Below, piece by piece: positions 6,374-41,153 of a stretch of DNA of 64,000 nucleotides; the stretch's first letter is position 1; every line of letters begins with the position of its first letter. Under the pieces are notes generated by a model that saw only the letters and a list, made by a program, of their open reading frames with translations, had not been told where the DNA came from and searched no databases. Made by a program: the position numbers and the translations under genes. The stretch spans positions 62,001 through 126,000 of IMG/VR virus record IMGVR_UViG_3300013104_000001. The stretch is one strand, 5' to 3'.

Positions 6374-7525
6374 ATGCGTCAATATTTAGACGGGGTTCGT
6401 TATATCTTTGAAAACGGATCTCAACGCGGTGACCGTACTGGCGTGGGTACGTTATCTGTCTTCTCCATGAAACAGACTTACGACCTGCGCCAAGGCTTCC
6501 CGTTGGTTACCAGTAAAAAGGTTCGTATGGATTACATCCTTCATGAGCTCATTTCATTCCTGTCAGGTAATCCTGATATGCCGGGTATCAGTATCTGGGA
6601 TGACTGGCGTGTGAAGGAAGAGATTTCTCGCGAAATCCCGATGGATAATCCCGAGCGACTTACTGCCTGGTGCGAACTGTCTGATCTCAAACGTCCGATC
6701 GCTGAAGCACAGCTCAATGGCATGGGTTCTGTGAAAGCGGCTCATGCTTTCCTGGATCAACAGGGAGTGCCACGTAATAAGAAAGTTGTCCTGGTACCAG
6801 AAGGTGCACTCAATGCACCATACGGGCCAGCCTGGCGCGCGTGGAAGGGTCGTAATGGCGAAGTGCATGATCAGATCGGTTATCTGCTAAACATGCTTAA
6901 AACGAATCCTACGAGCCGTCGTATGGTGTTGTCTGCATGGGATCCCGGTAACATGCCAGATGAATCCATCAGCCCGCAGGATAATGTCATTGCTGGTAAG
7001 CCATGCCTGACTCCATGTCACTGGGCGTTCGAGCTGTACACCGATGAGATCCCGGTTGAAGATCGTATCAATTGGATCGAGGCTAACGCACCTAGCGTCT
7101 GGGATGACTACAACGAATGGTCCCATCGGGGTCACTGGCTAGGTGATACGGATAATAAACGTCTGAATGAGTTTATGGATGATGCTAACGTACCTAAGTA
7201 TTACCTGGATCTGAAATACCATCAGCGTTCATGCGACTACATGGTTGGCGTACCGTATAACATCGCAAGCTATGCCGCACTGCAGCACATGTTTGCCAAC
7301 TCGGTGAACATGATCCCACGTATGTTAGAAGCGGACATGACTAACGTGCATATTTACAATTTCCATAAGGAGAATGCAATTATGCAAGCGAGTCGTACCC
7401 CGCGTGAGTTACCACAACTCACTCTTCTTACTCACTGTGAAAAGCTGGAGGATTACAAGCTGGAAGACTTTAAGTTGGAAGGCTATGACCCACATCCATT
7501 TATTAAATATGAGAGAGCTGTGTAA
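6374..7525 (+). CDS. thyA: thymidylate synthase (with insertions)
   Basis: DRTGVGT, FPLVTSKK, SRRMVLSAW, catalytic PCH, QRSCD, PYNIASY, HIY. Confidence 0.95.
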   Translation: MRQYLDGVRYIFENGSQRGDRTGVGTLSVFSMKQTYDLRQGFPLVTSKKVRMDYILHELISFLSGNPDMPGISIWDDWRVKEEISREIPMDNPERLTAWCELSDLKRPIAEAQLNGMGSVKAAHAFLDQQGVPRNKKVVLVPEGALNAPYGPAWRAWKGRNGEVHDQIGYLLNMLKTNPTSRRMVLSAWDPGNMPDESISPQDNVIAGKPCLTPCHWAFELYTDEIPVEDRINWIEANAPSVWDDYNEWSHRGHWLGDTDNKRLNEFMDDANVPKYYLDLKYHQRSCDYMVGVPYNIASYAALQHMFANSVNMIPRMLEADMTNVHIYNFHKENAIMQASRTPRELPQLTLLTHCEKLEDYKLEDFKLEGYDPHPFIKYERAV

Positions 7526-14525: not shown

Positions 14526-15053
14526 ATGGAATACGGATTCCTTCTCAATACCCTGCTGCTAATCGCGGCGCTTTTCGTGTTGTTCAGATTCCACAAACTC
14601 GTTAACAACAACGAGCGTGCGGTAATTGCATCGGCGCATGACGCCAAACTGCGTTTCCTCGTGTACATCAGTCGTAAGATGATGGCTGACCTTTATAGTG
14701 CAGTTGATTTGGCGACGCTGACCGCGTGTCCAAAGACATACCTGCGGGCTGATGGGTCAGTTGAAAACATACAAGTCATCATGAAGCGATTCCACAAAGA
14801 GTATAATGAAGTTATTGATAAACTCTCTGTCGGTCTACAACTCGAATACATGAAGATTAGCAGGGTCGTGGTGGTTGAATCACCCGACGGGAAAGAAGTG
14901 ACCATCAGTGTGCATTGGGCTAACAAATATACCGACGTACTGGTGTTCAGTCATAACCACATGGCACAAGCGGTTTACCAGTTGGATCGTCTCGCCCATC
15001 GGCTTTCAACCTTTGGGTACACGGCACCAGCTAAAGACATGTATCAACTCTAA
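14526..15053 (+). CDS. N-terminally anchored membrane protein
   Basis: GAGGTG RBS; N-terminal TM. Confidence 0.7.
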   Translation: MEYGFLLNTLLLIAALFVLFRFHKLVNNNERAVIASAHDAKLRFLVYISRKMMADLYSAVDLATLTACPKTYLRADGSVENIQVIMKRFHKEYNEVIDKLSVGLQLEYMKISRVVVVESPDGKEVTISVHWANKYTDVLVFSHNHMAQAVYQLDRLAHRLSTFGYTAPAKDMYQL

Positions 15054-15058
15054 ACTTA

Positions 15059-15102
15059 GGGGAGGGCTTCGGCTCTCCCTTATGCTGCCTTATTTTTTTT
15101 TT
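15059..15102 (+). terminator. 3'-end hairpin + TTATGCTG variant + T tract
   Basis: GGGAGGGC-TTCG-GCTCTCCC-TTATGCTG. Confidence 0.75.
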
Positions 15103-15164
15103 GATTGATAATATGATTTGCAAGAAATCACCGAGTAGTATCTTTCAATTAATTAGGAGTTATC

Positions 15165-17066
15165 ATGGCAGCTACAACTGATGTATTATCGCCCCTGCAA
15201 AGACTTCTCGCAAGTGCAAAGGATAATACCCGTGTTGTCACTATCAATAATGGCGAGATGTCCTATTTCCCATTAAGTGATTTAACCGAACAGCTCACCA
15301 ACCTCCTGAGTGTTGATGTGTTGAAAGCCAATGATGCGCTGTGCTTAATTGGCCAAATCCAATCTTTCGATGAACTGCGTAAAACCAAACCACGGATGGA
15401 AGGTGCCCGTATCTCTCTGCGTGGCTGGAATGCCAACACCTGTTGTGGTGGCGGTGAGTTCATCGGTCATCTTAGCAAAGGGAAAGATGATGGCGGTACG
15501 ATTGCCGCAGGTAATGGGTTCTACTGGGAACGTGTAATGACTGACCCGGCTGAGCTCAACGTAACACATTGGGGCGCGGTACCTGACTCGAAAACCGATG
15601 CTGTTCCGGCAATGCTGAATATGTACAACTGGTCACAGGCTAACTACCAAGGTGTCGGTGTACGTTTCCCAGCAGGAACATTCTTTGTCTCTTCCTTTAA
15701 ACCAGGCAGAGAGCTCAACATTATCCGCATTACTGGCAACCCGACCAACTTTGGTTATCATGGTTCGACAATCCTCGTGTCGAATGAAGATGATAACTTC
15801 ATGATTGATCTGACAGCCCGTAAAGTAGAATTGGCTAACTTCATTTTCCGCGGTACAACAACTGTTGATAAACCGACTAAGAAAAGTGTCTACAACAACG
15901 ACATCATCGGCGGTCAGTTCTTTAACGGTAGCTGTCTGCGTTTTGAAAACATCGGTGGTAAAAGTATCAAGCTGGTCGATACCCTCGATACCCGTATCAA
16001 TCAGTGGTATGTCTCACAGTGTACCGGTGATGTGATTACCTCGACATGGTCTGGTCGGGCTGCCGGAGTATGGGATCACAGTACTGCAATCGAACTGTCT
16101 AACTTCAACGTACAGAACGTTCGTGGCGCAATGGTCTTTAATCTCCCACGCTGTACTCAGTCGATGATGTACAATGGCTGGATTGAACACTGTGATGATC
16201 CAGGCGATCTGAACAACGGTCAATGGGTGGTTACCGCGCTTAGCATCGAAGAGTGTAAGAAACCACTGCGTGTGGCATACGCACGTCTTATTGAGACGGC
16301 TCGTAGTCTGCAGTCTGGTTCAAGCATCGATTACACACCAGATCCGAACATCACCGAATGGTTAAGCGAATGGGAACGTGGTCGTGTTGACTTACAGAAC
16401 TACGGGGTTTACACCGATGGTTCTCTTGAGTTCGGCGCCATGATGTCCCGTAACAAACTGAGCAACTCTGGTGTCTCACCGAAGTGGTTCCGTGTTGGTA
16501 AGTTCTTCTCACCTGCTGAAGGTGATCAGATCGATGTCAATCTGGTTGGTACTGGTAACTTCCTCTCAGCCAGCGCTGTACTGAACGATGTCGATGATAC
16601 CCGTCAAGGCGGTGGTAACACACTGATTCGTATTCAGTACAAGAAAGACGGTGCAATTGGCGGTACTTTAATGCCGATGGGTTCCTCACCTATCCAGGCT
16701 GCTAAGATCGTTAAAGATGGATCACGCTGTGTTCTTTATGTACAGCTGAAAGGTTACACCCGTAACGTTATCCCAATCATCACAGCAACGGGTAGCACGC
16801 ACTTTGAGAAAGGCGTGTCGTTCTACTTCCGTGCAGATGTCTCGCCGGTAACCGATGCTGAAGTCACAGCGCTGGTCAACTCGACAGATATCAGCGAGCA
16901 GTGGTCTATTGGTCAGAAAGCAGGTGTCGGCGCTACTAATGAAGGCGACCTGATTCTGAAGGGCAAGATTGTAGGTGACTTCCTGCAGGTGCGGGTTCAG
17001 GTTAACCAAGCCCAGTGGTCGAAGTCCGAGCTGCGCTATATCGAGCTCAAGAAAGAAGCAAAATAA
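15165..17066 (+). CDS. AmsF/WceF-like tailspike-fold (beta-helix) exopolysaccharide-modifying enzyme
   Basis: GGGEF…DDGGTI…WERV…LNVTHWGAVPD, WDHSTAIELSNFN, NGWIEH motifs typical of AmsF/WceF-type proteins. Confidence 0.75.
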   Translation: MAATTDVLSPLQRLLASAKDNTRVVTINNGEMSYFPLSDLTEQLTNLLSVDVLKANDALCLIGQIQSFDELRKTKPRMEGARISLRGWNANTCCGGGEFIGHLSKGKDDGGTIAAGNGFYWERVMTDPAELNVTHWGAVPDSKTDAVPAMLNMYNWSQANYQGVGVRFPAGTFFVSSFKPGRELNIIRITGNPTNFGYHGSTILVSNEDDNFMIDLTARKVELANFIFRGTTTVDKPTKKSVYNNDIIGGQFFNGSCLRFENIGGKSIKLVDTLDTRINQWYVSQCTGDVITSTWSGRAAGVWDHSTAIELSNFNVQNVRGAMVFNLPRCTQSMMYNGWIEHCDDPGDLNNGQWVVTALSIEECKKPLRVAYARLIETARSLQSGSSIDYTPDPNITEWLSEWERGRVDLQNYGVYTDGSLEFGAMMSRNKLSNSGVSPKWFRVGKFFSPAEGDQIDVNLVGTGNFLSASAVLNDVDDTRQGGGNTLIRIQYKKDGAIGGTLMPMGSSPIQAAKIVKDGSRCVLYVQLKGYTRNVIPIITATGSTHFEKGVSFYFRADVSPVTDAEVTALVNSTDISEQWSIGQKAGVGATNEGDLILKGKIVGDFLQVRVQVNQAQWSKSELRYIELKKEAK

Positions 17067-17072
17067 GAACAC

Positions 17073-17099
17073 GGGTCCCTTCGGGGGCCCTTTATGCCG
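17073..17099 (+). terminator. 3'-end hairpin + TTATGCCG tag
   Basis: GGGTCCC-TTCG-GGGGCCC then TTTATGCCG. Confidence 0.75.
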
Positions 17100-17121
17100 C
17101 CCTAATTTTAATTCATCTATA

Positions 17122-17146
17122 TTTCATGTCTATATTACCAGTATGG
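17122..17146 (+). promoter_or_regulatory. putative phage-RNAP (early) promoter
   Basis: TTTCATG-TCTATATTAC; downstream GTGA box degenerate. Confidence 0.6.
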
Positions 17147-17222
17147 TGAATCAAGGAATATCGAGTCACTACACATGTGCAGTCAATCAATATTCAACAA
17201 TACCTCCAGGAACATACCGACC

Positions 17223-19478
17223 ATGAAATTAAAATCGCTTGCCGTTTCCGTTATTCTGTTTACAGCCGGAGCGAACGCTTCTCTGATCAATCTCGATCTG
17301 GGAATCCTGAACTCCACCGTCAACAAAACTACCGGTGACGTTACCGCCCTGAAAGAAACTACCGCGCTGCACACGCAGCAGATCGGTCAGCTGAATACCG
17401 GCCTGAACAACCTGAACACCAAAGTCGACACCTCTGTCAGTTACTTCAATGGTGAACTGGGTAAAACCAACTCGGCGCTGAACAACACCAACCTCAAAGC
17501 TGGCCAGGCATTCGACATCGCAGTCGAAGGTCGTGCAACGGCTAACAACGCACTGGCTACCTCTTACGGTAACGTTGCGGCAATCAACAACCTGGGCGCA
17601 AAGCTCAATGGCGAAATCGATGCGCGTGTTAGCGCTGATGACGCACTGAACGGTCGCATTGACAATCTGTCCACGTCTACGGCGAATGCCACCACAGCGC
17701 TGGATGGTAAGATCGACGCATTGTCTGCCGCAGGGACCGCGGCGATCGGGGCGGTTGACGGTAAAGTCGATACCCTGAATGGTAAAGTCAATGACCTGGC
17801 TGCAACCGGCGTGAAAGTTGCCGGTCAGCTGAATGACAAAATTGACGCTGGCGATAAAGCGCTGAGCACCCGTCTGGATTCGGCCATTGCTAATGCGCAA
17901 GCAGATAGCAAAGCGCTGGGTAACCGTGTTGATGTCGCACAAGCAACTGGCACTGCAGGCGTGGTACTCGGTACTGTCGCTAACCTGAAAGTAGATGCGC
18001 TGGGCGCAAAAGTGGATGCAACCACTAAAGCGCAAGCGGGCGTGAACAAATCTGTTGATGGTCGTCTGACTTCTGTTGAAGGCAAAACTGCACAAAACAG
18101 CAAAGATATCAGCGGTCTGAAAACTGGTCTGGCGACCACCAATACCAACGTGGGTAATCTGAACACCAAAGTGGACGGTGCGATTGCTACTCAGGCAGGT
18201 ATCAATAATCAGGTTCAACGGCAGTTCGGTGAAACAGGTGAGCGTATCGGTCGTACCGAAACTCGCCTGGATACAGCTGAAGGCGCGCTGCGTGATCAGG
18301 GTGATCATCTGAATGCAGTTGATGCACGTTCACAAAACAACGCCGTGCGTTTAGACGGTGTTGAAGGTGGTCTGCGTGAAACTAACGATCAGATGACCAA
18401 AGATCGTACCAACATCAATAACCGTGTAGACGGTGTTCAGTCACAGGTTGACAAAAACACCAACGACATTGTTAACGTTGGTAACGTTGCGAACGAAGGC
18501 TACAACAAAGCAGTGAACGCACAGAACACTGCTGACGTTGCAGTCGGTCTGGGTCAGAAGGGTATCAACGACGCCTACAATGCGCAGCAGACTGCTAACG
18601 CAGGTGTTGCCATCGGCCAGGATGCGAAGAACACAGCAATCAATGCGCAGAACACCGCGGATGTCGCTGTAGGCATGGGCCAGAAAAATGGCAATGACAT
18701 TGTCAATCTCGACAATCGCGTAACCACGAATACTGGTGCGATTCAAAAGAACAGCAATGACATCGTTAATCTGGATAACCGTACCACATCCAATACCCAG
18801 CAGATCCAGCAAACGCGGAACGATCTGGTTAACACGAACAATGTGCTGACTCAGAACGTGAAGCAGACTCAGTCTAACACCAACCGCATCACCACGGCTG
18901 AAGGCACCATCGCAACGCATACCTCGCAGATTGCGAACCACGAAGGTCGTATCACAACCAATGAAAACAATATCACTAAGAACACCAGTGATATCAAAGA
19001 AACTCAGACGGTTGTGAACAATCAGGGTAAAGTGATTAACAATCACGAGACGCGTATCACTAACAATGAAACGAACATCTCTAACCTGAGCAACGACTAC
19101 TACCAGTTCCAGGATATCTACAACCAGAACAACCAGATCATCAACAACAACATCAATAACTCTTCTGCCCGCACTCTGCAGCAGTCTAAGAGCTATACTG
19201 ATCAGCAAGTTGGTAACCTGCGTAACGAAGTGAACCGTAACAAAGATGAAGCGCGTTCCGGCGTGGCTTCTGTTGCGGCGATGGCTAACATTCCACAGGT
19301 GGCTGGACAGACGTTTACTGTTGGTGCAGGTATTGGTCAGTATAAAGACAAGACTGCATTGGCCGTCGGTGGCGTGTGGGCAGTAAGCCCTAACGTTGCT
19401 GCTAAGACTTCTATCGGCTTCTCTTCTGGCAGTGGTTCTGATGTAGTTGCTGGCGCCGGTCTTGGCTTCGGCTTCTAA
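17223..19478 (+). CDS. YadA-family trimeric autotransporter adhesin
   Basis: signal peptide MKLKSLAVSVILFTAGANA, long Asn/Thr-rich coiled-coil stalk, anchor GVASVAAMANIPQ…GAGLGFGF with terminal Phe. Confidence 0.9.
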   Translation: MKLKSLAVSVILFTAGANASLINLDLGILNSTVNKTTGDVTALKETTALHTQQIGQLNTGLNNLNTKVDTSVSYFNGELGKTNSALNNTNLKAGQAFDIAVEGRATANNALATSYGNVAAINNLGAKLNGEIDARVSADDALNGRIDNLSTSTANATTALDGKIDALSAAGTAAIGAVDGKVDTLNGKVNDLAATGVKVAGQLNDKIDAGDKALSTRLDSAIANAQADSKALGNRVDVAQATGTAGVVLGTVANLKVDALGAKVDATTKAQAGVNKSVDGRLTSVEGKTAQNSKDISGLKTGLATTNTNVGNLNTKVDGAIATQAGINNQVQRQFGETGERIGRTETRLDTAEGALRDQGDHLNAVDARSQNNAVRLDGVEGGLRETNDQMTKDRTNINNRVDGVQSQVDKNTNDIVNVGNVANEGYNKAVNAQNTADVAVGLGQKGINDAYNAQQTANAGVAIGQDAKNTAINAQNTADVAVGMGQKNGNDIVNLDNRVTTNTGAIQKNSNDIVNLDNRTTSNTQQIQQTRNDLVNTNNVLTQNVKQTQSNTNRITTAEGTIATHTSQIANHEGRITTNENNITKNTSDIKETQTVVNNQGKVINNHETRITNNETNISNLSNDYYQFQDIYNQNNQIINNNINNSSARTLQQSKSYTDQQVGNLRNEVNRNKDEARSGVASVAAMANIPQVAGQTFTVGAGIGQYKDKTALAVGGVWAVSPNVAAKTSIGFSSGSGSDVVAGAGLGFGF

Positions 19479-19489
19479 GTTATAAAGTC

Positions 19490-19522
19490 AGGGACCTTCG
19501 GGTCCCTTTCTTTTTTATGTCT
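19490..19522 (+). terminator. intrinsic terminator (TTATGTC variant tag)
   Basis: AGGGACC-TTCG-GGTCCCT + T tract. Confidence 0.8.
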
Positions 19523-19606
19523 ATTTGTAGAAGTGGACAGAATAAAGAAGTTCTATACTCCCGCTGACCAAACAAAGTGTCGGCTAAACAAAGAAGAGGT
19601 AGTATC

Positions 19607-20320
19607 ATGCATATCGTAGAATCCAAAGTTGTACGTCTGGATAAACTCGCTGAATTCGCTAACGCCAATTTTGATCGCGAACCTGGCCAGCAATTTAATC
19701 TACCGTATAGCGTTGAGATTGATTATTACGAAGATCTTAAGACGGGTCATCAGTACACGCTGGCACTGAGACAGATTGGTAGTGACGGCCTTGTAAAAAC
19801 CCTGTACAGGACAGCTAAATTACCGAACGCCTTTGCCCGTGATAAGTTTGTCAAAATTGAAAACAGTATGGCGGGATATGGTCCTGGTATTGAACTTCTC
19901 GGTATGGCTGCGTGGTATTGGTTGCTGACTAAAGATAACCAGAACGGTCGTGAGCTTGGTATCGAGATCGCTACAAAAGCATGGGATGCTTGGACATTGG
20001 TCACTGCTATCATTGATGGTTCTAAAGCACGCGACAAATTCCAGCAACATGGTTTTCTGTGCCCTGGTGTTATTTTTGACCAAGCCATTCTGTGCGCGTC
20101 TATTCCTGGCGATCCATCCGTTTGGTTAAAGCGCATGACCGTAAGAAGTCTCGGTAATGTAAATATCGTATCGCGTTGGACATTCGTCAAAGTGTACCAA
20201 GGTAATCATGATCTCTTCCATGAAGAGAAACATGCAATAATGCAAACAACTAGTTTGCATCAGGAACCGGCTTCTGCTGAAAAGATTTTGAAAGCCAAGG
20301 CCTTCCCTTTTAATCCGTGA
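19607..20320 (+). CDS. hypothetical protein
   Basis: GAGGT RBS, ATG 19607. Confidence 0.7.
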   Translation: MHIVESKVVRLDKLAEFANANFDREPGQQFNLPYSVEIDYYEDLKTGHQYTLALRQIGSDGLVKTLYRTAKLPNAFARDKFVKIENSMAGYGPGIELLGMAAWYWLLTKDNQNGRELGIEIATKAWDAWTLVTAIIDGSKARDKFQQHGFLCPGVIFDQAILCASIPGDPSVWLKRMTVRSLGNVNIVSRWTFVKVYQGNHDLFHEEKHAIMQTTSLHQEPASAEKILKAKAFPFNP

Positions 20321-20327
20321 GGTTGTT

Positions 20328-20759
20328 ATGGTCATCCCTGTAAATCCATTACAGTTGTATTGGTGCGGATGGCAACATCCTAACACCGTTGTAGTGCCGT
20401 TGCAGTATCCTCCTAATCCGAACATCCTGGCATACTGGACTACCGGTGCAGGTGAGCTCTGTGACGCGACCACACATTGGCAGCATATCCCGTTCAGTAC
20501 TTATACGGGGATTATTGCAGCTGAGAATGAAATCGCAGCGCAGATGGTAATCCAGGCAGAGTTCCCAAGTATGGGCTTGCGGTTCATCCGAGTATTCACT
20601 CCAAGTGATATTCAAAATGAACAGTTCGCATTGTCTGATATGTCGTGGTCATCTATGCGAGTTAACCACTTCATGCAGACTCGTCAGTTACTTGATCGCC
20701 ATGCCGCCGGATTCTACGGGAATGGTTGGTTCGCTGTCACCTATTTGAAAGGACAGTAA
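20328..20759 (+). CDS. hypothetical protein
   Basis: GAGGT RBS. Confidence 0.7.
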   Translation: MVIPVNPLQLYWCGWQHPNTVVVPLQYPPNPNILAYWTTGAGELCDATTHWQHIPFSTYTGIIAAENEIAAQMVIQAEFPSMGLRFIRVFTPSDIQNEQFALSDMSWSSMRVNHFMQTRQLLDRHAAGFYGNGWFAVTYLKGQ

Positions 20760-20766
20760 CATGCTC

Positions 20767-20800
20767 AAGAGGGAGGCTTCGGCTTCCCTCTTTTATTCCG
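20767..20800 (+). terminator. 3'-end hairpin + TTATTCCG variant
   Basis: AAGAGGGAGGC-TTCG-GCTTCCCTCTT. Confidence 0.75.
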
Positions 20801-20833
20801 ATCTTTTATTTTTTGATTGCAATAAAAGTTAAA

Positions 20834-20851
20834 CCTACATTACCAATGTGA
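20834..20851 (+). promoter_or_regulatory. putative phage-RNAP (early) promoter
   Basis: CCTACATTAC-caat-GTGA. Confidence 0.7.
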
Positions 20852-41083: not shown

Positions 41084-41090
41084 TAACGAT

Positions 41091-41118
41091 GCCAGGGTTA
41101 GCCCTGGCTCTTATGCCG
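41091..41118 (+). terminator. 3'-end hairpin + TTATGCCG tag
   Basis: GCCAGGG-TTAG-CCCTGGC then TCTTATGCCG. Confidence 0.75.
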
Positions 41119-41128
41119 TGCTAAATCA

Positions 41129-41153
41129 TTTCATACCTACATTACCCATGTGT
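41129..41153 (+). promoter_or_regulatory. putative phage-RNAP (early) promoter
   Basis: TTTCATA-CCTACATTAC-ccat-GTGT. Confidence 0.7.

What the first reader, a model, noticed from the sequence alone, without database searches (positions are those of the whole stretch)
17122..19522. Complete trimeric autotransporter adhesin as a stand-alone early transcription unit in an apparently lytic jumbo phage
Seen: signal peptide, a ~650-aa nearly headless coiled-coil stalk with internal repeats (NAQNTADVAVG x2, NDIVNLDNR x2, NHExRITxNE x2) and a YadA beta-barrel anchor, bracketed by the promoter motif and a terminator, next to the EPS enzyme. Established: such adhesins are typically bacterial or prophage (Eib-type) genes. 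Inference: the infected cell displays a long fibre that aggregates it with uninfected neighbours before lysis, or shields receptors. With the EPS enzyme this would form a surface-remodelling module.
Basis: partly seen in the sequence, partly recalled or inferred. Interest (0 to 1): 0.6.

Follow-up and report, generated by a model that had tools for sequence, protein, structure and literature searches.

The report
Phage-borne outer-membrane fibre gene cassette
A lytic, nucleus-forming giant phage carries an inserted gene for a roughly 95-nm bacterial-type surface fibre that the infected cell probably makes early in infection. Such genes are already annotated in many lytic phages, but none has a tested function.

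Summary
Window 17223-19478 (+) encodes a 751-aa protein with a Sec signal peptide, a nearly unbroken helical stalk of about 650 aa with no recognised head domain, and a YadA-type four-strand anchor ending in F. A modelled trimer scores 0.86, against 0.00 for the best control.

The gene is a 2.4-kb cassette. It is inserted into an intergenic spacer that is uninterrupted in Erwinia phage AH06 (Agricanvirus), directly behind a resident promoter-like motif (TCTATATTACC). This motif family has 20 copies in the genome, all on the + strand and 19 of them intergenic. One copy precedes the nuclear-shell gene chmA, which is a known early gene, so early expression is a reasonable inference but has not been measured. 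An intrinsic terminator follows the gene.

An orthologue in a second uncultivated phage gives dN/dS 0.09, so the gene is kept by selection.

It is not new in kind. Full-length relatives with a signal peptide and anchor are annotated in Yoloswag, pEa_SNUABM_5, phiEa2809/Bue1, phiEco32, Aeromonas D3 (another chimallivirus) and N4-like phages. None has a tested function.

The idea of a module with the EPS depolymerase is not supported. The adjacency comes from the insertion, the two genes have different upstream signals, and the pairing is absent from the other lineages examined (no depolymerase is annotated near the gene there).

The function remains inferred: blocking of adsorption, or cell aggregation.

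The parts
15165..17066 (+). Upstream neighbour, an EPS depolymerase or tail-spike homologue. It is not part of the cassette.
   Evidence: It matches PHROG 4250 at 1e-218. It is 77% identical in nucleotides to the AH06 gp84 tail spike. The RAY orthologue gp76 was detected by mass spectrometry and is active on Pantoea vagans (PMC6690015). No CTAYATWAC motif lies upstream of it.
17073..17099 (+). GC hairpin with a TTCG loop (17073-17090), directly followed by TTTATGCCG (17091-17099). This is the resident terminator-type element after the depolymerase gene.
   Evidence: The hairpin folds at -14.9 kcal/mol. The same composite element recurs across the genome: 23 exact copies of TTTATGCCG against about 2 expected from base composition. 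It is conserved in AH06 and L009.
17129..17139 (+). Resident early-type promoter motif TCTATATTACC, lying 84 nt before the start codon.
   Evidence: The CTAYATWAC family has 20 copies in the 287-kb genome, all on the + strand and 19 intergenic. Most lie 43-80 nt upstream of ORF starts (three lie further and one nearer). One copy precedes chmA. The motif is conserved at the same site in AH06, which lacks the fibre gene, and in L009. The motif class is described in PMC7598289.
17142..19524 (+). The inserted cassette of about 2.38 kb: 5' leader, fibre gene, terminator and a second ATGTCTAT.
   Evidence: Homology to the AH06 spacer stops after ...ATTACCAG and resumes at TTGTAGAA. About 20 nt of the AH06 spacer are replaced. 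GC content is 50.1% against 46.8% for the genome.
17223..19478 (+). Coding sequence of the trimeric-autotransporter-type fibre (751 aa plus stop).
   Evidence: dN/dS against L009 is 0.09.
17223..17279 (+). Sec signal peptide (residues 1-19, with A-N-A before the cleavage site).
   Evidence: Sequence inspection. The same layout is seen in 13 of 13 aligned relatives and in Bue1, phiEco32 and D3.
17499..17573 (+). Conserved motif near the distal tip (residues 93-117, core AFDIAVEGRATAxNAL).
   Evidence: These are the only invariant or nearly invariant passenger columns apart from a few positions in the C-terminal stalk (A100, T106, A107, N109, A110, T113), in a 13-sequence alignment whose members include homologues from an Erwinia phage and a Xanthomonas phage, besides unnamed metagenomic sequences.
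17328..19286 (+). Helical stalk (residues 36-688) carrying the three peptide repeats.
   Evidence: AlphaFold2 secondary structure. In the trimer model the contacts over residues 590-688 are spaced as heptads. The repeats are located. The coiled coil resembles the P22 gp26 needle, E 1e-7.
19302..19475 (+). YadA-type membrane anchor: four beta-strands per chain, with the C-terminus ...GLGFGF.
   Evidence: Pfam PF03895. PDB profile hits 2lme, 2gr7 and 3emo. Strands at 698-749. Inter-chain strand contacts in the trimer model.
19490..19516 (+). Intrinsic terminator: a 7-bp GC stem with a TTCG loop, then a T run.
   Evidence: -15.7 kcal/mol, z -3.89. It is conserved in L009.
19607..20320 (+). Downstream resident gene, the AH06 gp85 homologue (PHROG 11154). 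Its conserved leader is now cut off from the promoter motif by the cassette.
   Evidence: The ATG at 19607 aligns with the AH06 start.

Best explanation
The locus is a moron-like gene cassette in a lytic, nucleus-forming jumbo phage of the Agricanvirus type.

What is shown:
- The cassette was inserted into the leader of a resident gene, immediately downstream of a resident promoter motif of the class that also precedes chmA.
- It carries its own intrinsic terminator.
- It encodes a headless trimeric-autotransporter-type protein.

What is inferred:
- The virion RNA polymerase transcribes the gene early.
- Host ribosomes make the precursor, Sec exports it, and the BAM machinery inserts three chains as one 12-stranded barrel.
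- A roughly 650-residue three-stranded coiled coil is threaded out through the barrel. At about 0.15 nm per residue this gives a fibre of about 95 nm on the surface of the infected cell.
- It is not a virion part.

Most likely role (inference): it changes the infected cell's surface so that further phages adsorb less well. This would act as superinfection exclusion and/or protect progeny from sticking to debris. The effect could be steric, or could work through the conserved distal motif.
For: Identity:
- The anchor is over the Pfam cut-off. A family profile matches the solved YadA, AtaA and Hia anchors.
- The monomer model shows helix 36-688 followed by four strands.
- The trimer model of residues 590-751 gives ipSAE 0.86 in all three runs, against a best control of 0.00. 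pLDDT is 93 and at least 99% of contacts are shared between runs. In the tool's calibration this mark was reached by 21 of 30 solved pairs and 0 of 23 single chains.
- The signal peptide and the C-terminal aromatic residue are conserved in the family.

Insertion: AH06 is syntenic on both sides but lacks the gene.

Early class:
- The motif family has 20 copies, all on the + strand and 19 intergenic.
- The same variant lies 80 nt before chmA.
- chmA is an early gene transcribed by the virion RNA polymerase (PMC12908238).
- A conserved AT-rich motif near -10 marks early operons in every jumbo phage that encodes its own RNA polymerases (PMC7598289).
- An independent homologue, L008, also sits behind an ACATATTAC-type motif.

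Selection:
- dN/dS is 0.09 overall and 0.03-0.08 along the stalk.
- In a 99.2%-identical phage, 7 of the 8 substitutions in the gene fall at third codon positions.

Non-structural context: in six phage lineages the gene lies among small early-type or nucleotide-metabolism genes.

The exclusion idea: a phage outer-membrane protein blocking receptors has a precedent in lambda Lom-LamB, and has been proposed for the outer-membrane proteins of huge phages (preprint 10.64898/2026.10.24.761521).
Against: - No expression, localisation or phenotype data exist for this gene. I found none for any lytic-phage homologue in the papers I could search.
- The RNA runs that were laid held no phage reads, so they give no test.
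- Promoter timing is assigned by analogy, not measured.
- The trimer score may only reflect likeness to solved anchors (caveat stated).
- The monomer model has low confidence (pLDDT 61).
- Nothing in the sequence tells exclusion apart from aggregation.
- A sparse fibre layer might not hinder adsorption at all.
Confidence: 0.4

Rival explanations
1. The fibre is an autoagglutinin or adhesin that glues the infected cell to uninfected neighbours or to a plant surface, so that released progeny meet hosts at high local density.
For: - Many bacterial trimeric autotransporters autoagglutinate (established knowledge), and the homologues were named after Saa.
- The most conserved passenger motif sits near the distal tip, where binding would be expected.
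- The gene recurs in several unrelated Erwinia and Pantoea phage lineages from plant habitats (PMC10654107).
Against: - No recognised binding head is present.
- The 'autoagglutinating' names rest on anchor similarity only.
- Early timing fits exclusion at least as well as aggregation.
- The tip motif is conserved in homologues from phages of quite different hosts, which argues against a host-specific ligand.
Confidence: 0.3
2. The protein acts on the envelope itself. It might stabilise or load the outer membrane during the long jumbo-phage latent period, or contribute to outer-membrane disruption at lysis.
For: - It is a barrel inserted into the outer membrane.
- Huge phages encode many envelope-directed proteins.
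Against: - A 650-residue stalk under strong purifying selection (dN/dS 0.03-0.08) is not needed for a purely membrane role.
- The early-type motif does not fit a lysis function.
Confidence: 0.1
3. It is a recently acquired passenger gene that gives the phage no benefit, that is, a neutral moron.
For: - It is absent from AH06 and from every Agricanvirus record in the phage collection.
- Its GC content is a little higher than the genome's.
Against: - It is kept intact in three genomes: the window, L009 at dS 0.60, and X2.
- dN/dS is 0.09.
- Homologues are retained in many lytic phage lineages.
Confidence: 0.07
4. It is a virion tail fibre or tail protein, as the PHROG category 'tail' and some GenBank notes suggest.
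For: - PHROG 17426 and 26246 are filed under 'tail'.
- The stalk resembles the P22 gp26 needle.
Against: - A cleavable Sec signal peptide and an outer-membrane barrel with a C-terminal aromatic residue send the protein out of the cytoplasm, where virions assemble.
- The gene never lies in a structural module.
- The motif upstream is of the early type.
Confidence: 0.03

Closest known systems
Erwinia phage vB_EamM_Yoloswag gp261 and pEa_SNUABM_5 gp273, 'putative autoagglutinating adhesin' (PHROG 17426)
   Same: - They are full-length homologues: 45% identity over 72-85% of the query.
- They have a signal peptide, a long coiled-coil stalk, a YadA anchor and their own downstream hairpin.
- They lie among small hypothetical genes in lytic jumbo phages.
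   Different: - Those phages have no chimallin and a different genomic context.
- They carry short Gly-rich N-terminal repeats (GGLxNxGG), of which only a vestige remains here.
- No function has been tested for them either.
Aeromonas phage D3/D6/LAh10 'putative YadA-like protein' (Ludhianavirus)
   Same: D3 encodes chimallin. It therefore shows that a nucleus-forming jumbo phage with a signal-peptide-bearing, YadA-anchored protein is already on record.
   Different: Sequence similarity is limited to the anchor. The D3 protein is 1105 aa long and lies in a different context.
Bacterial trimeric autotransporter adhesins (YadA, Hia, AtaA, Saa, EibD)
   Same: - The anchor is homologous.
- The predicted trimer has a 12-stranded barrel and a coiled-coil stalk with Asn at core positions.
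- The export route through Sec and BAM is inferred to be the same.
   Different: - There is no head, neck or extended signal-peptide domain.
- Bacterial genomes match only the last 100-250 residues, at 25-45% identity.
- Full-length relatives were found only in named phages and on unnamed metagenomic contigs, several of phage-like size.
- Eib proteins belong to prophages and bind immunoglobulin, and nothing suggests that here.
yadA homologues of small virulent phages (phiEco32 gp119; Salmonella FSL cluster 3; N4-like vB_EamP-S6; ViI-like phiEa2809 and Bue1)
   Same: - They share the signal peptide, a short stalk and the anchor.
- They sit in non-structural positions.
- They are described in the literature as putative virulence or auxiliary genes (PMC3728262; PMC10654107).
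   Different: They are much shorter (265-470 aa). Outside the Erwinia phages, similarity is mostly confined to the anchor.
Morons, and the PeSL promoter-terminator cassettes of T4-type phages
   Same: The cassette is an independent unit that is absent from close relatives. It is flanked by a stem-loop plus early-promoter composite on the left and a stem-loop plus partial motif on the right. This matches the architecture named in PMC2839356 and PMC4122927 and the moron concept (PMC3594210).
   Different: - This is a different phage family with different motif sequences.
- The cassette uses the resident promoter rather than bringing one that can be shown to be its own.
- The recombination mechanism is inferred, not shown.

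Membership tests
Trimeric autotransporter adhesin (type Vc secretion) | A C-terminal YadA-like anchor with four beta-strands per chain. This is the one domain common to all members. | tested here: met
   PF03895 scores 38.2 bits against a cut-off of 22.7. The family profile matches PDB 2lme at 3.4e-11, and also 2gr7, 2gr8, 3emo and 9vnj. Four strands lie at 698-749.
Trimeric autotransporter adhesin (type Vc secretion) | Obligate homotrimer forming one 12-stranded barrel and a trimeric coiled coil. | tested here: met
   This is met by model only. Three copies of residues 590-751 give ipSAE 0.86 against a best control of 0.00, with pLDDT 93. Contacts are spaced as heptads over 590-688 and run between strands over 688-751. 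In calibration, 21 of 30 solved pairs and 0 of 23 single chains reached the mark. The score may reflect memory of solved anchors.
Trimeric autotransporter adhesin (type Vc secretion) | An N-terminal Sec signal peptide. | tested here: met
   Judged by inspection only: MKLK, then 12 hydrophobic residues, then A-N-A. It is conserved in all relatives examined. No predictor was available.
Trimeric autotransporter adhesin (type Vc secretion) | A passenger with a recognised head and neck. This is typical of the family but not obligatory. | tested here: not met
   No Hep_Hag, HIM, YadA_head, YadA_stalk or ESPR hit appears even at E 5. The model is helical from residue 36 onward.
Trimeric autotransporter adhesin (type Vc secretion) | Surface exposure and adhesive activity. 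| not testable with these tools
   This needs outer-membrane proteomics, microscopy and binding assays.
Early (virion-RNA-polymerase) gene of a chimallivirus | A conserved AT-rich motif near -10, shared with known early genes. | tested here: met
   TCTATATTACC lies at 17129-17139. The identical variant lies 80 nt before chmA. The family has 20 copies, all on the + strand and 19 intergenic. The class is described in PMC7598289 and PMC12908238.
Early (virion-RNA-polymerase) gene of a chimallivirus | A transcript present in the first minutes of infection that starts downstream of the motif. | not testable with these tools
   Three RNA runs were laid. Only stray partial reads at 90-95% likeness appeared, so they give no test.
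Moron / mobile cassette | Absent from close relatives at an otherwise syntenic site, and carrying its own transcription signals. | tested here: met
   In AH06 a 197-bp spacer sits where the 2.38-kb cassette lies. The cassette has its own terminator. L009 shares the insertion.
Virion tail fibre (PHROG category 'tail') | A cytoplasmic protein encoded in a structural module and present in virions. | tested here: not met
   The protein has a signal peptide and an outer-membrane anchor. Its neighbours are nucleotide-metabolism and small unknown genes. No virion proteomics exists for this phage.
Co-regulated surface-remodelling module with the EPS depolymerase | Conserved adjacency and shared regulation. 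| tested here: not met
   The adjacency is created by the insertion. It is found only in L009 and X2. It is absent from the annotated or scanned flanks in five other lineages. A hairpin separates the two genes, and the motif precedes only the fibre gene.

The most novel reading that the evidence does not exclude
The headless, signal-peptide-bearing YadA-anchored proteins found in many unrelated virulent phages, including this one, would form a phage-resident family. Its shared job would be to cloak the infected cell early in infection with fibres of about 40-100 nm that block adsorption of competing phages. This would be a fibre-based form of superinfection exclusion that works from the outer membrane and has not yet been described. 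The conserved distal motif (AFDIAVEGRATAxNAL) would be its functional core.
Probability: 0.25. Interest if true: 0.7.

Novelty: new member of a known kind. Interest (0 to 1): 0.4.

Why it matters
Lytic phages have been known since at least 2008-2013 to carry yadA-like genes. These have been filed either as 'virulence genes' or as 'tail proteins', and I found no experimental test of them in the papers I could search.

This copy gives a clean case for three reasons:
- It is clearly an insertion.
- It sits behind the same motif as the earliest known gene of nucleus-forming phages.
- It is under strong purifying selection.

That makes the question 'why would a lytic phage decorate a cell it is about to kill?' directly testable. 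A 99.2%-identical phage genome is present in a small 2025 sequencing run, so the phage may be in culture.

The case also shows that the PHROG 'tail' label for these families is probably wrong. Finally, it shows that composite terminator-promoter elements may drive gene shuffling in chimalliviruses, as PeSLs do in T4-type phages.

Tried and rejected
- RNA evidence. Three RNA-seq runs carrying the organism label of the best DNA holders were laid on 15000-20500. They gave 0-1 stray partial reads, so they give no test of expression.
- Periodicity. A crude Fourier analysis of core residues gave no clear 3.5-residue signal along the stalk and was dropped. The trimer model and the secondary structure were used instead.
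TATGTCTAT with one mismatch is not enriched: 13 matches against 16 expected. The real motif is CTAYATWAC.
- Sigma-70 scan. Promoter-like sites are no more frequent than chance: 15 against 16.1 expected.
- DNA-level repeats. The peptide repeats are diverged at synonymous sites. For example, the two NDIVNLDNR copies are 78% identical in DNA, so no recent duplication is indicated.
- Antisense ORFs. The ORFs inside the gene (17229-18308, 18441-19208, 17825-18169) have no PHROG match and are taken as chance frames.
- Bacterial donor. One pattern scan of 185,579 species' genomes gave only anchor-level matches and none in Erwinia or Pantoea. No donor was identified, but the scan used a single peptide pattern, so absence is weak evidence.
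- Chimallin in L008. None was found, but the contig is only 69% complete, so this is inconclusive.
- Literature. Searches for a tested function of phage-encoded trimeric autotransporters found none.
- Not run. The large representative protein search and the fold searches were not run, because the family assignment was already clear.
Full report
WHAT IS THERE

The window is bases 62001-126000 of a 287,406-bp virus record with direct terminal repeats. On the + strand, the ORF listing gives an ORF at 17175-19478. The real start is the ATG at 17223. The stretch before it is not kept in frame in the closest orthologue, and a textbook signal peptide begins at 17223: MKLK, twelve hydrophobic residues, then A-N-A. 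The protein contains no cysteine. The product is 751 aa.

Pfam finds only the YadA membrane anchor, at residues 694-751, with 38.2 bits against a cut-off of 22.7. No head, neck or stalk family appears even at E 5. A profile of 13 relatives hits the solved anchors of YadA (2lme, 3.4e-11), AtaA and Hia. The AlphaFold2 monomer has low confidence (pLDDT 61), but its layout is clear. It is helical over 36-688, with two short breaks, and then has four strands at 698-749.

Three copies of residues 590-751 were folded together. The score was 0.86 in all three runs, against a best control of 0.00. pLDDT was 93 and at least 99% of contacts were shared between runs. Contacts follow a heptad rhythm up to residue 688 and run between strands after that. 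In the tool's calibration, 21 of 30 solved pairs and 0 of 23 single chains reached this mark. The tool warns that a pass for a family with solved complexes shows likeness rather than binding.

THE PHAGE

The flanks are 71-77% identical in DNA to Erwinia phage AH06, genus Agricanvirus. The genome encodes the nuclear-shell protein chimallin (PHROG 4795, 1.8e-207). It has no integrase or resolvase. Erwinia phage RAY, which belongs to the Ea35-70-like jumbo family described in PMC6690015, is a characterised nucleus-forming phage (bioRxiv 10.1101/2023.02.24.529968). 'Lytic jumbo phage' therefore stands. The surrounding genes are thymidylate synthase, ribonucleotide reductase, dihydrofolate reductase, MazG, a helicase, an RNA-polymerase fragment and many unknowns. 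None of them is structural.

THE GENE IS AN INSERTION

In AH06 the depolymerase or tail-spike gene gp84 is followed by a 197-bp spacer and then gp85. Both halves of that spacer are recognisable in the window. The left half, with the hairpin, TTTATGCCG, an AT-rich stretch and TCTATATTACCAG, ends at about 17141. The right half, from TTGTAGAA to the start of the gp85 homologue at 19607, begins at about 19525. Between them lie 2.38 kb: an 80-nt leader, the fibre gene and a strong intrinsic terminator (-15.7 kcal/mol, z -3.9, then a T run). The octamer ATGTCTAT stands at both junctions.

None of the phage records matched by tblastn is an Agricanvirus. A second uncultivated phage, L009, shares the insertion at the same site. 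Its protein is 88% identical. A contig from a 2025 run (X2) is 99.2% identical across 15000-20500.

TRANSCRIPTION SIGNALS

The genome has 20 copies, all on the + strand and 19 intergenic. Most lie 43-80 nt before an ORF start, and they share an AT-rich upstream stretch and a GTG or TTG a few bases downstream. The window holds 6 copies against 1.68 expected, and no shuffle reaches 6.

One copy, with the same TCTATATTACC variant, precedes chmA. According to the literature, every jumbo phage that encodes its own RNA polymerases has a conserved AT-rich motif near -10 of its early operons, and wherever this was tested the motif proved to be the early promoter (PMC7598289). The literature also states that the virion polymerase transcribes chmA among the earliest genes (PMC12908238). 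From this I infer that the fibre gene is early.

The promoter itself is resident, not imported, because AH06 has it at the same place in front of gp85. A more distant homologue in a different context, L008, also lies behind an ACATATTAC-type motif and a hairpin followed by ATTATGCCG. The depolymerase gene upstream has no such motif and is closed off by its own hairpin.

IS IT FUNCTIONAL?

Against L009, dN/dS is 0.09 at dS 0.60. Along the stalk it is 0.03-0.08, comparable to or lower than the neighbouring genes. In X2, 7 of the 8 substitutions in the gene fall at third codon positions. The gene is kept by selection.

The anchor region is more diverged from L009 than the stalk is (dN 0.26). The L009 anchor is nearly identical to that of L008, so alleles have recombined within the gene.

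RELATIVES

The best matches are all phage-linked:
- Yoloswag gp261 (45% identity).
- Unnamed proteins on contigs of 46-74 kb and 237 kb.
- Xanthomonas jumbo phage XbC2.

Named bacterial YadA-like proteins appear only at E 1e-6 and weaker. A scan of one genome per bacterial species found only matches to the last 100-250 residues, at 25-45% identity.

Every phage homologue examined has a signal peptide, a C-terminal F or W, and its own downstream hairpin. Each lies among small early-type or nucleotide-metabolism genes. Aeromonas phage D3, which carries a 'YadA-like protein', also encodes chimallin.

The literature has already noted yadA homologues in virulent phages. These include phiEco32 and Salmonella phages (PMC3728262), and 19 N4-like genomes, among them Erwinia phage S6 (PMC10654107). 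They are treated there as putative virulence or auxiliary genes. I found no functional test. A 2026 preprint catalogues 1,603 outer-membrane barrels in huge phages and proposes receptor interference, but its 6-22-strand filter leaves this class out.

HOW IT MOST LIKELY WORKS

Shown: the domain layout, the insertion, the motif class, the terminator and the purifying selection.

Inferred: early transcription by the virion polymerase, translation in the cytoplasm, export by Sec, trimerisation and barrel insertion by BAM, and a fibre of about 95 nm (653 helical residues at about 0.15 nm each) on the infected cell.

For the role, I rank adsorption blocking (superinfection exclusion, or protection of progeny) first at about 0.4 of the total. 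The timing fits, and outer-membrane proteins of phages have this role in the known cases (T5 Llp from my own knowledge; lambda Lom as cited). The sequence cannot separate the two.

A virion role is very unlikely, given the export signals and the genomic context.

The proposed module with the EPS enzyme is not supported. The adjacency is a by-product of where the cassette landed. It is not conserved outside this sublineage, and the RAY orthologue of the depolymerase was found by mass spectrometry of phage preparations (PMC6690015), which points to a different, late class.

VERDICT

This is a real and well-formed feature that was correctly recognised. It is a new member of an already annotated, though functionally unexplored, kind. 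Interest is moderate.

Noticed in passing
whole genome G000; in the window e.g. 17073-17139, 20771-20843, 41090-41145: Composite elements recur: a GC hairpin (often with a CTTCGG loop), then (T)TTATGCCG, an AT-rich spacer and CTAYATWAC. The exact 9-mer TTTATGCCG occurs 23 times against about 2 expected. About 9 of the 20 promoter motifs follow such a hairpin directly. The layout resembles the PeSL promoter-terminator cassettes that mediate gene shuffling in T4-type phages (PMC2839356, PMC4122927).
   Followed up: partly
window 17126-17133 and 19517-19524: The octamer ATGTCTAT stands at both junctions of the inserted cassette. On the right it carries only the first half of the promoter motif. 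It could be a microhomology used for insertion or the remnant of a duplicated promoter. In L009 the right copy reads GTGTCTAT.
   Followed up: partly
window 19525-20320: The resident gene downstream (the AH06 gp85 homologue, PHROG 11154, start at 19607) keeps its conserved leader, but the cassette and a strong terminator now separate it from its promoter motif. How it is expressed is unclear. It is still under purifying selection (dN/dS 0.20 against L009).
   Followed up: partly
window 19203-19475; L009 and L008 C-termini: The gene is mosaic. The L009 stalk is close to the window's, but its anchor is nearly identical to that of the distant L008 (108 of the last 112 alignment columns) and differs from the window's, which also lacks four residues.
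   Followed up: partly
window 17499-17573 (residues 93-117): The motif AFDIAVEGRATAxNAL(x)T(x)YG near the distal end of the fibre is the most conserved part of the passenger, across aligned homologues that include proteins of an Erwinia phage and a Xanthomonas phage. Its structure and role are unknown, and the monomer model has low confidence there.
   Followed up: partly
PHROG 17426, 26246: These families are filed under 'tail'. Yet the members examined have Sec signal peptides and outer-membrane anchors and lie outside structural modules, so the category is probably a mis-assignment.
   Followed up: partly
window 15000-20500 versus run X2: A 159-kb contig from a small 2025 run filed under an organism label (coded A) is 99.2% identical and colinear across this stretch. 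Other runs from three further studies hold 80-82% of the sampled words. The window's likely source is a rhizosphere metagenome. Weaker partial matches come from phyllosphere, plant, leaf-litter and insect samples.
   Followed up: partly
window 6374-7525: A 383-aa thymidylate synthase covers only positions 33-308 of a 335-position profile, so it carries about 100 extra residues. In AH06 the corresponding region has an HNH homing endonuclease next to a short thymidylate-synthase fragment. An insertion or intron-related rearrangement is possible.
   Followed up: no
window 15165-17066: The EPS depolymerase homologue starts at position 127 of the 786-position PHROG 4250 profile. It therefore lacks the N-terminal part that many members have. 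The AH06 orthologue is of similar length (1899 nt).
   Followed up: no
window 18783-19031 (residues 521-603): The stalk matches the coiled coil of the P22 tail needle gp26 (PDB 4lin, E 1e-7). This is a shared Asn-rich trimeric coiled-coil pattern, not evidence for a needle function.
   Followed up: no
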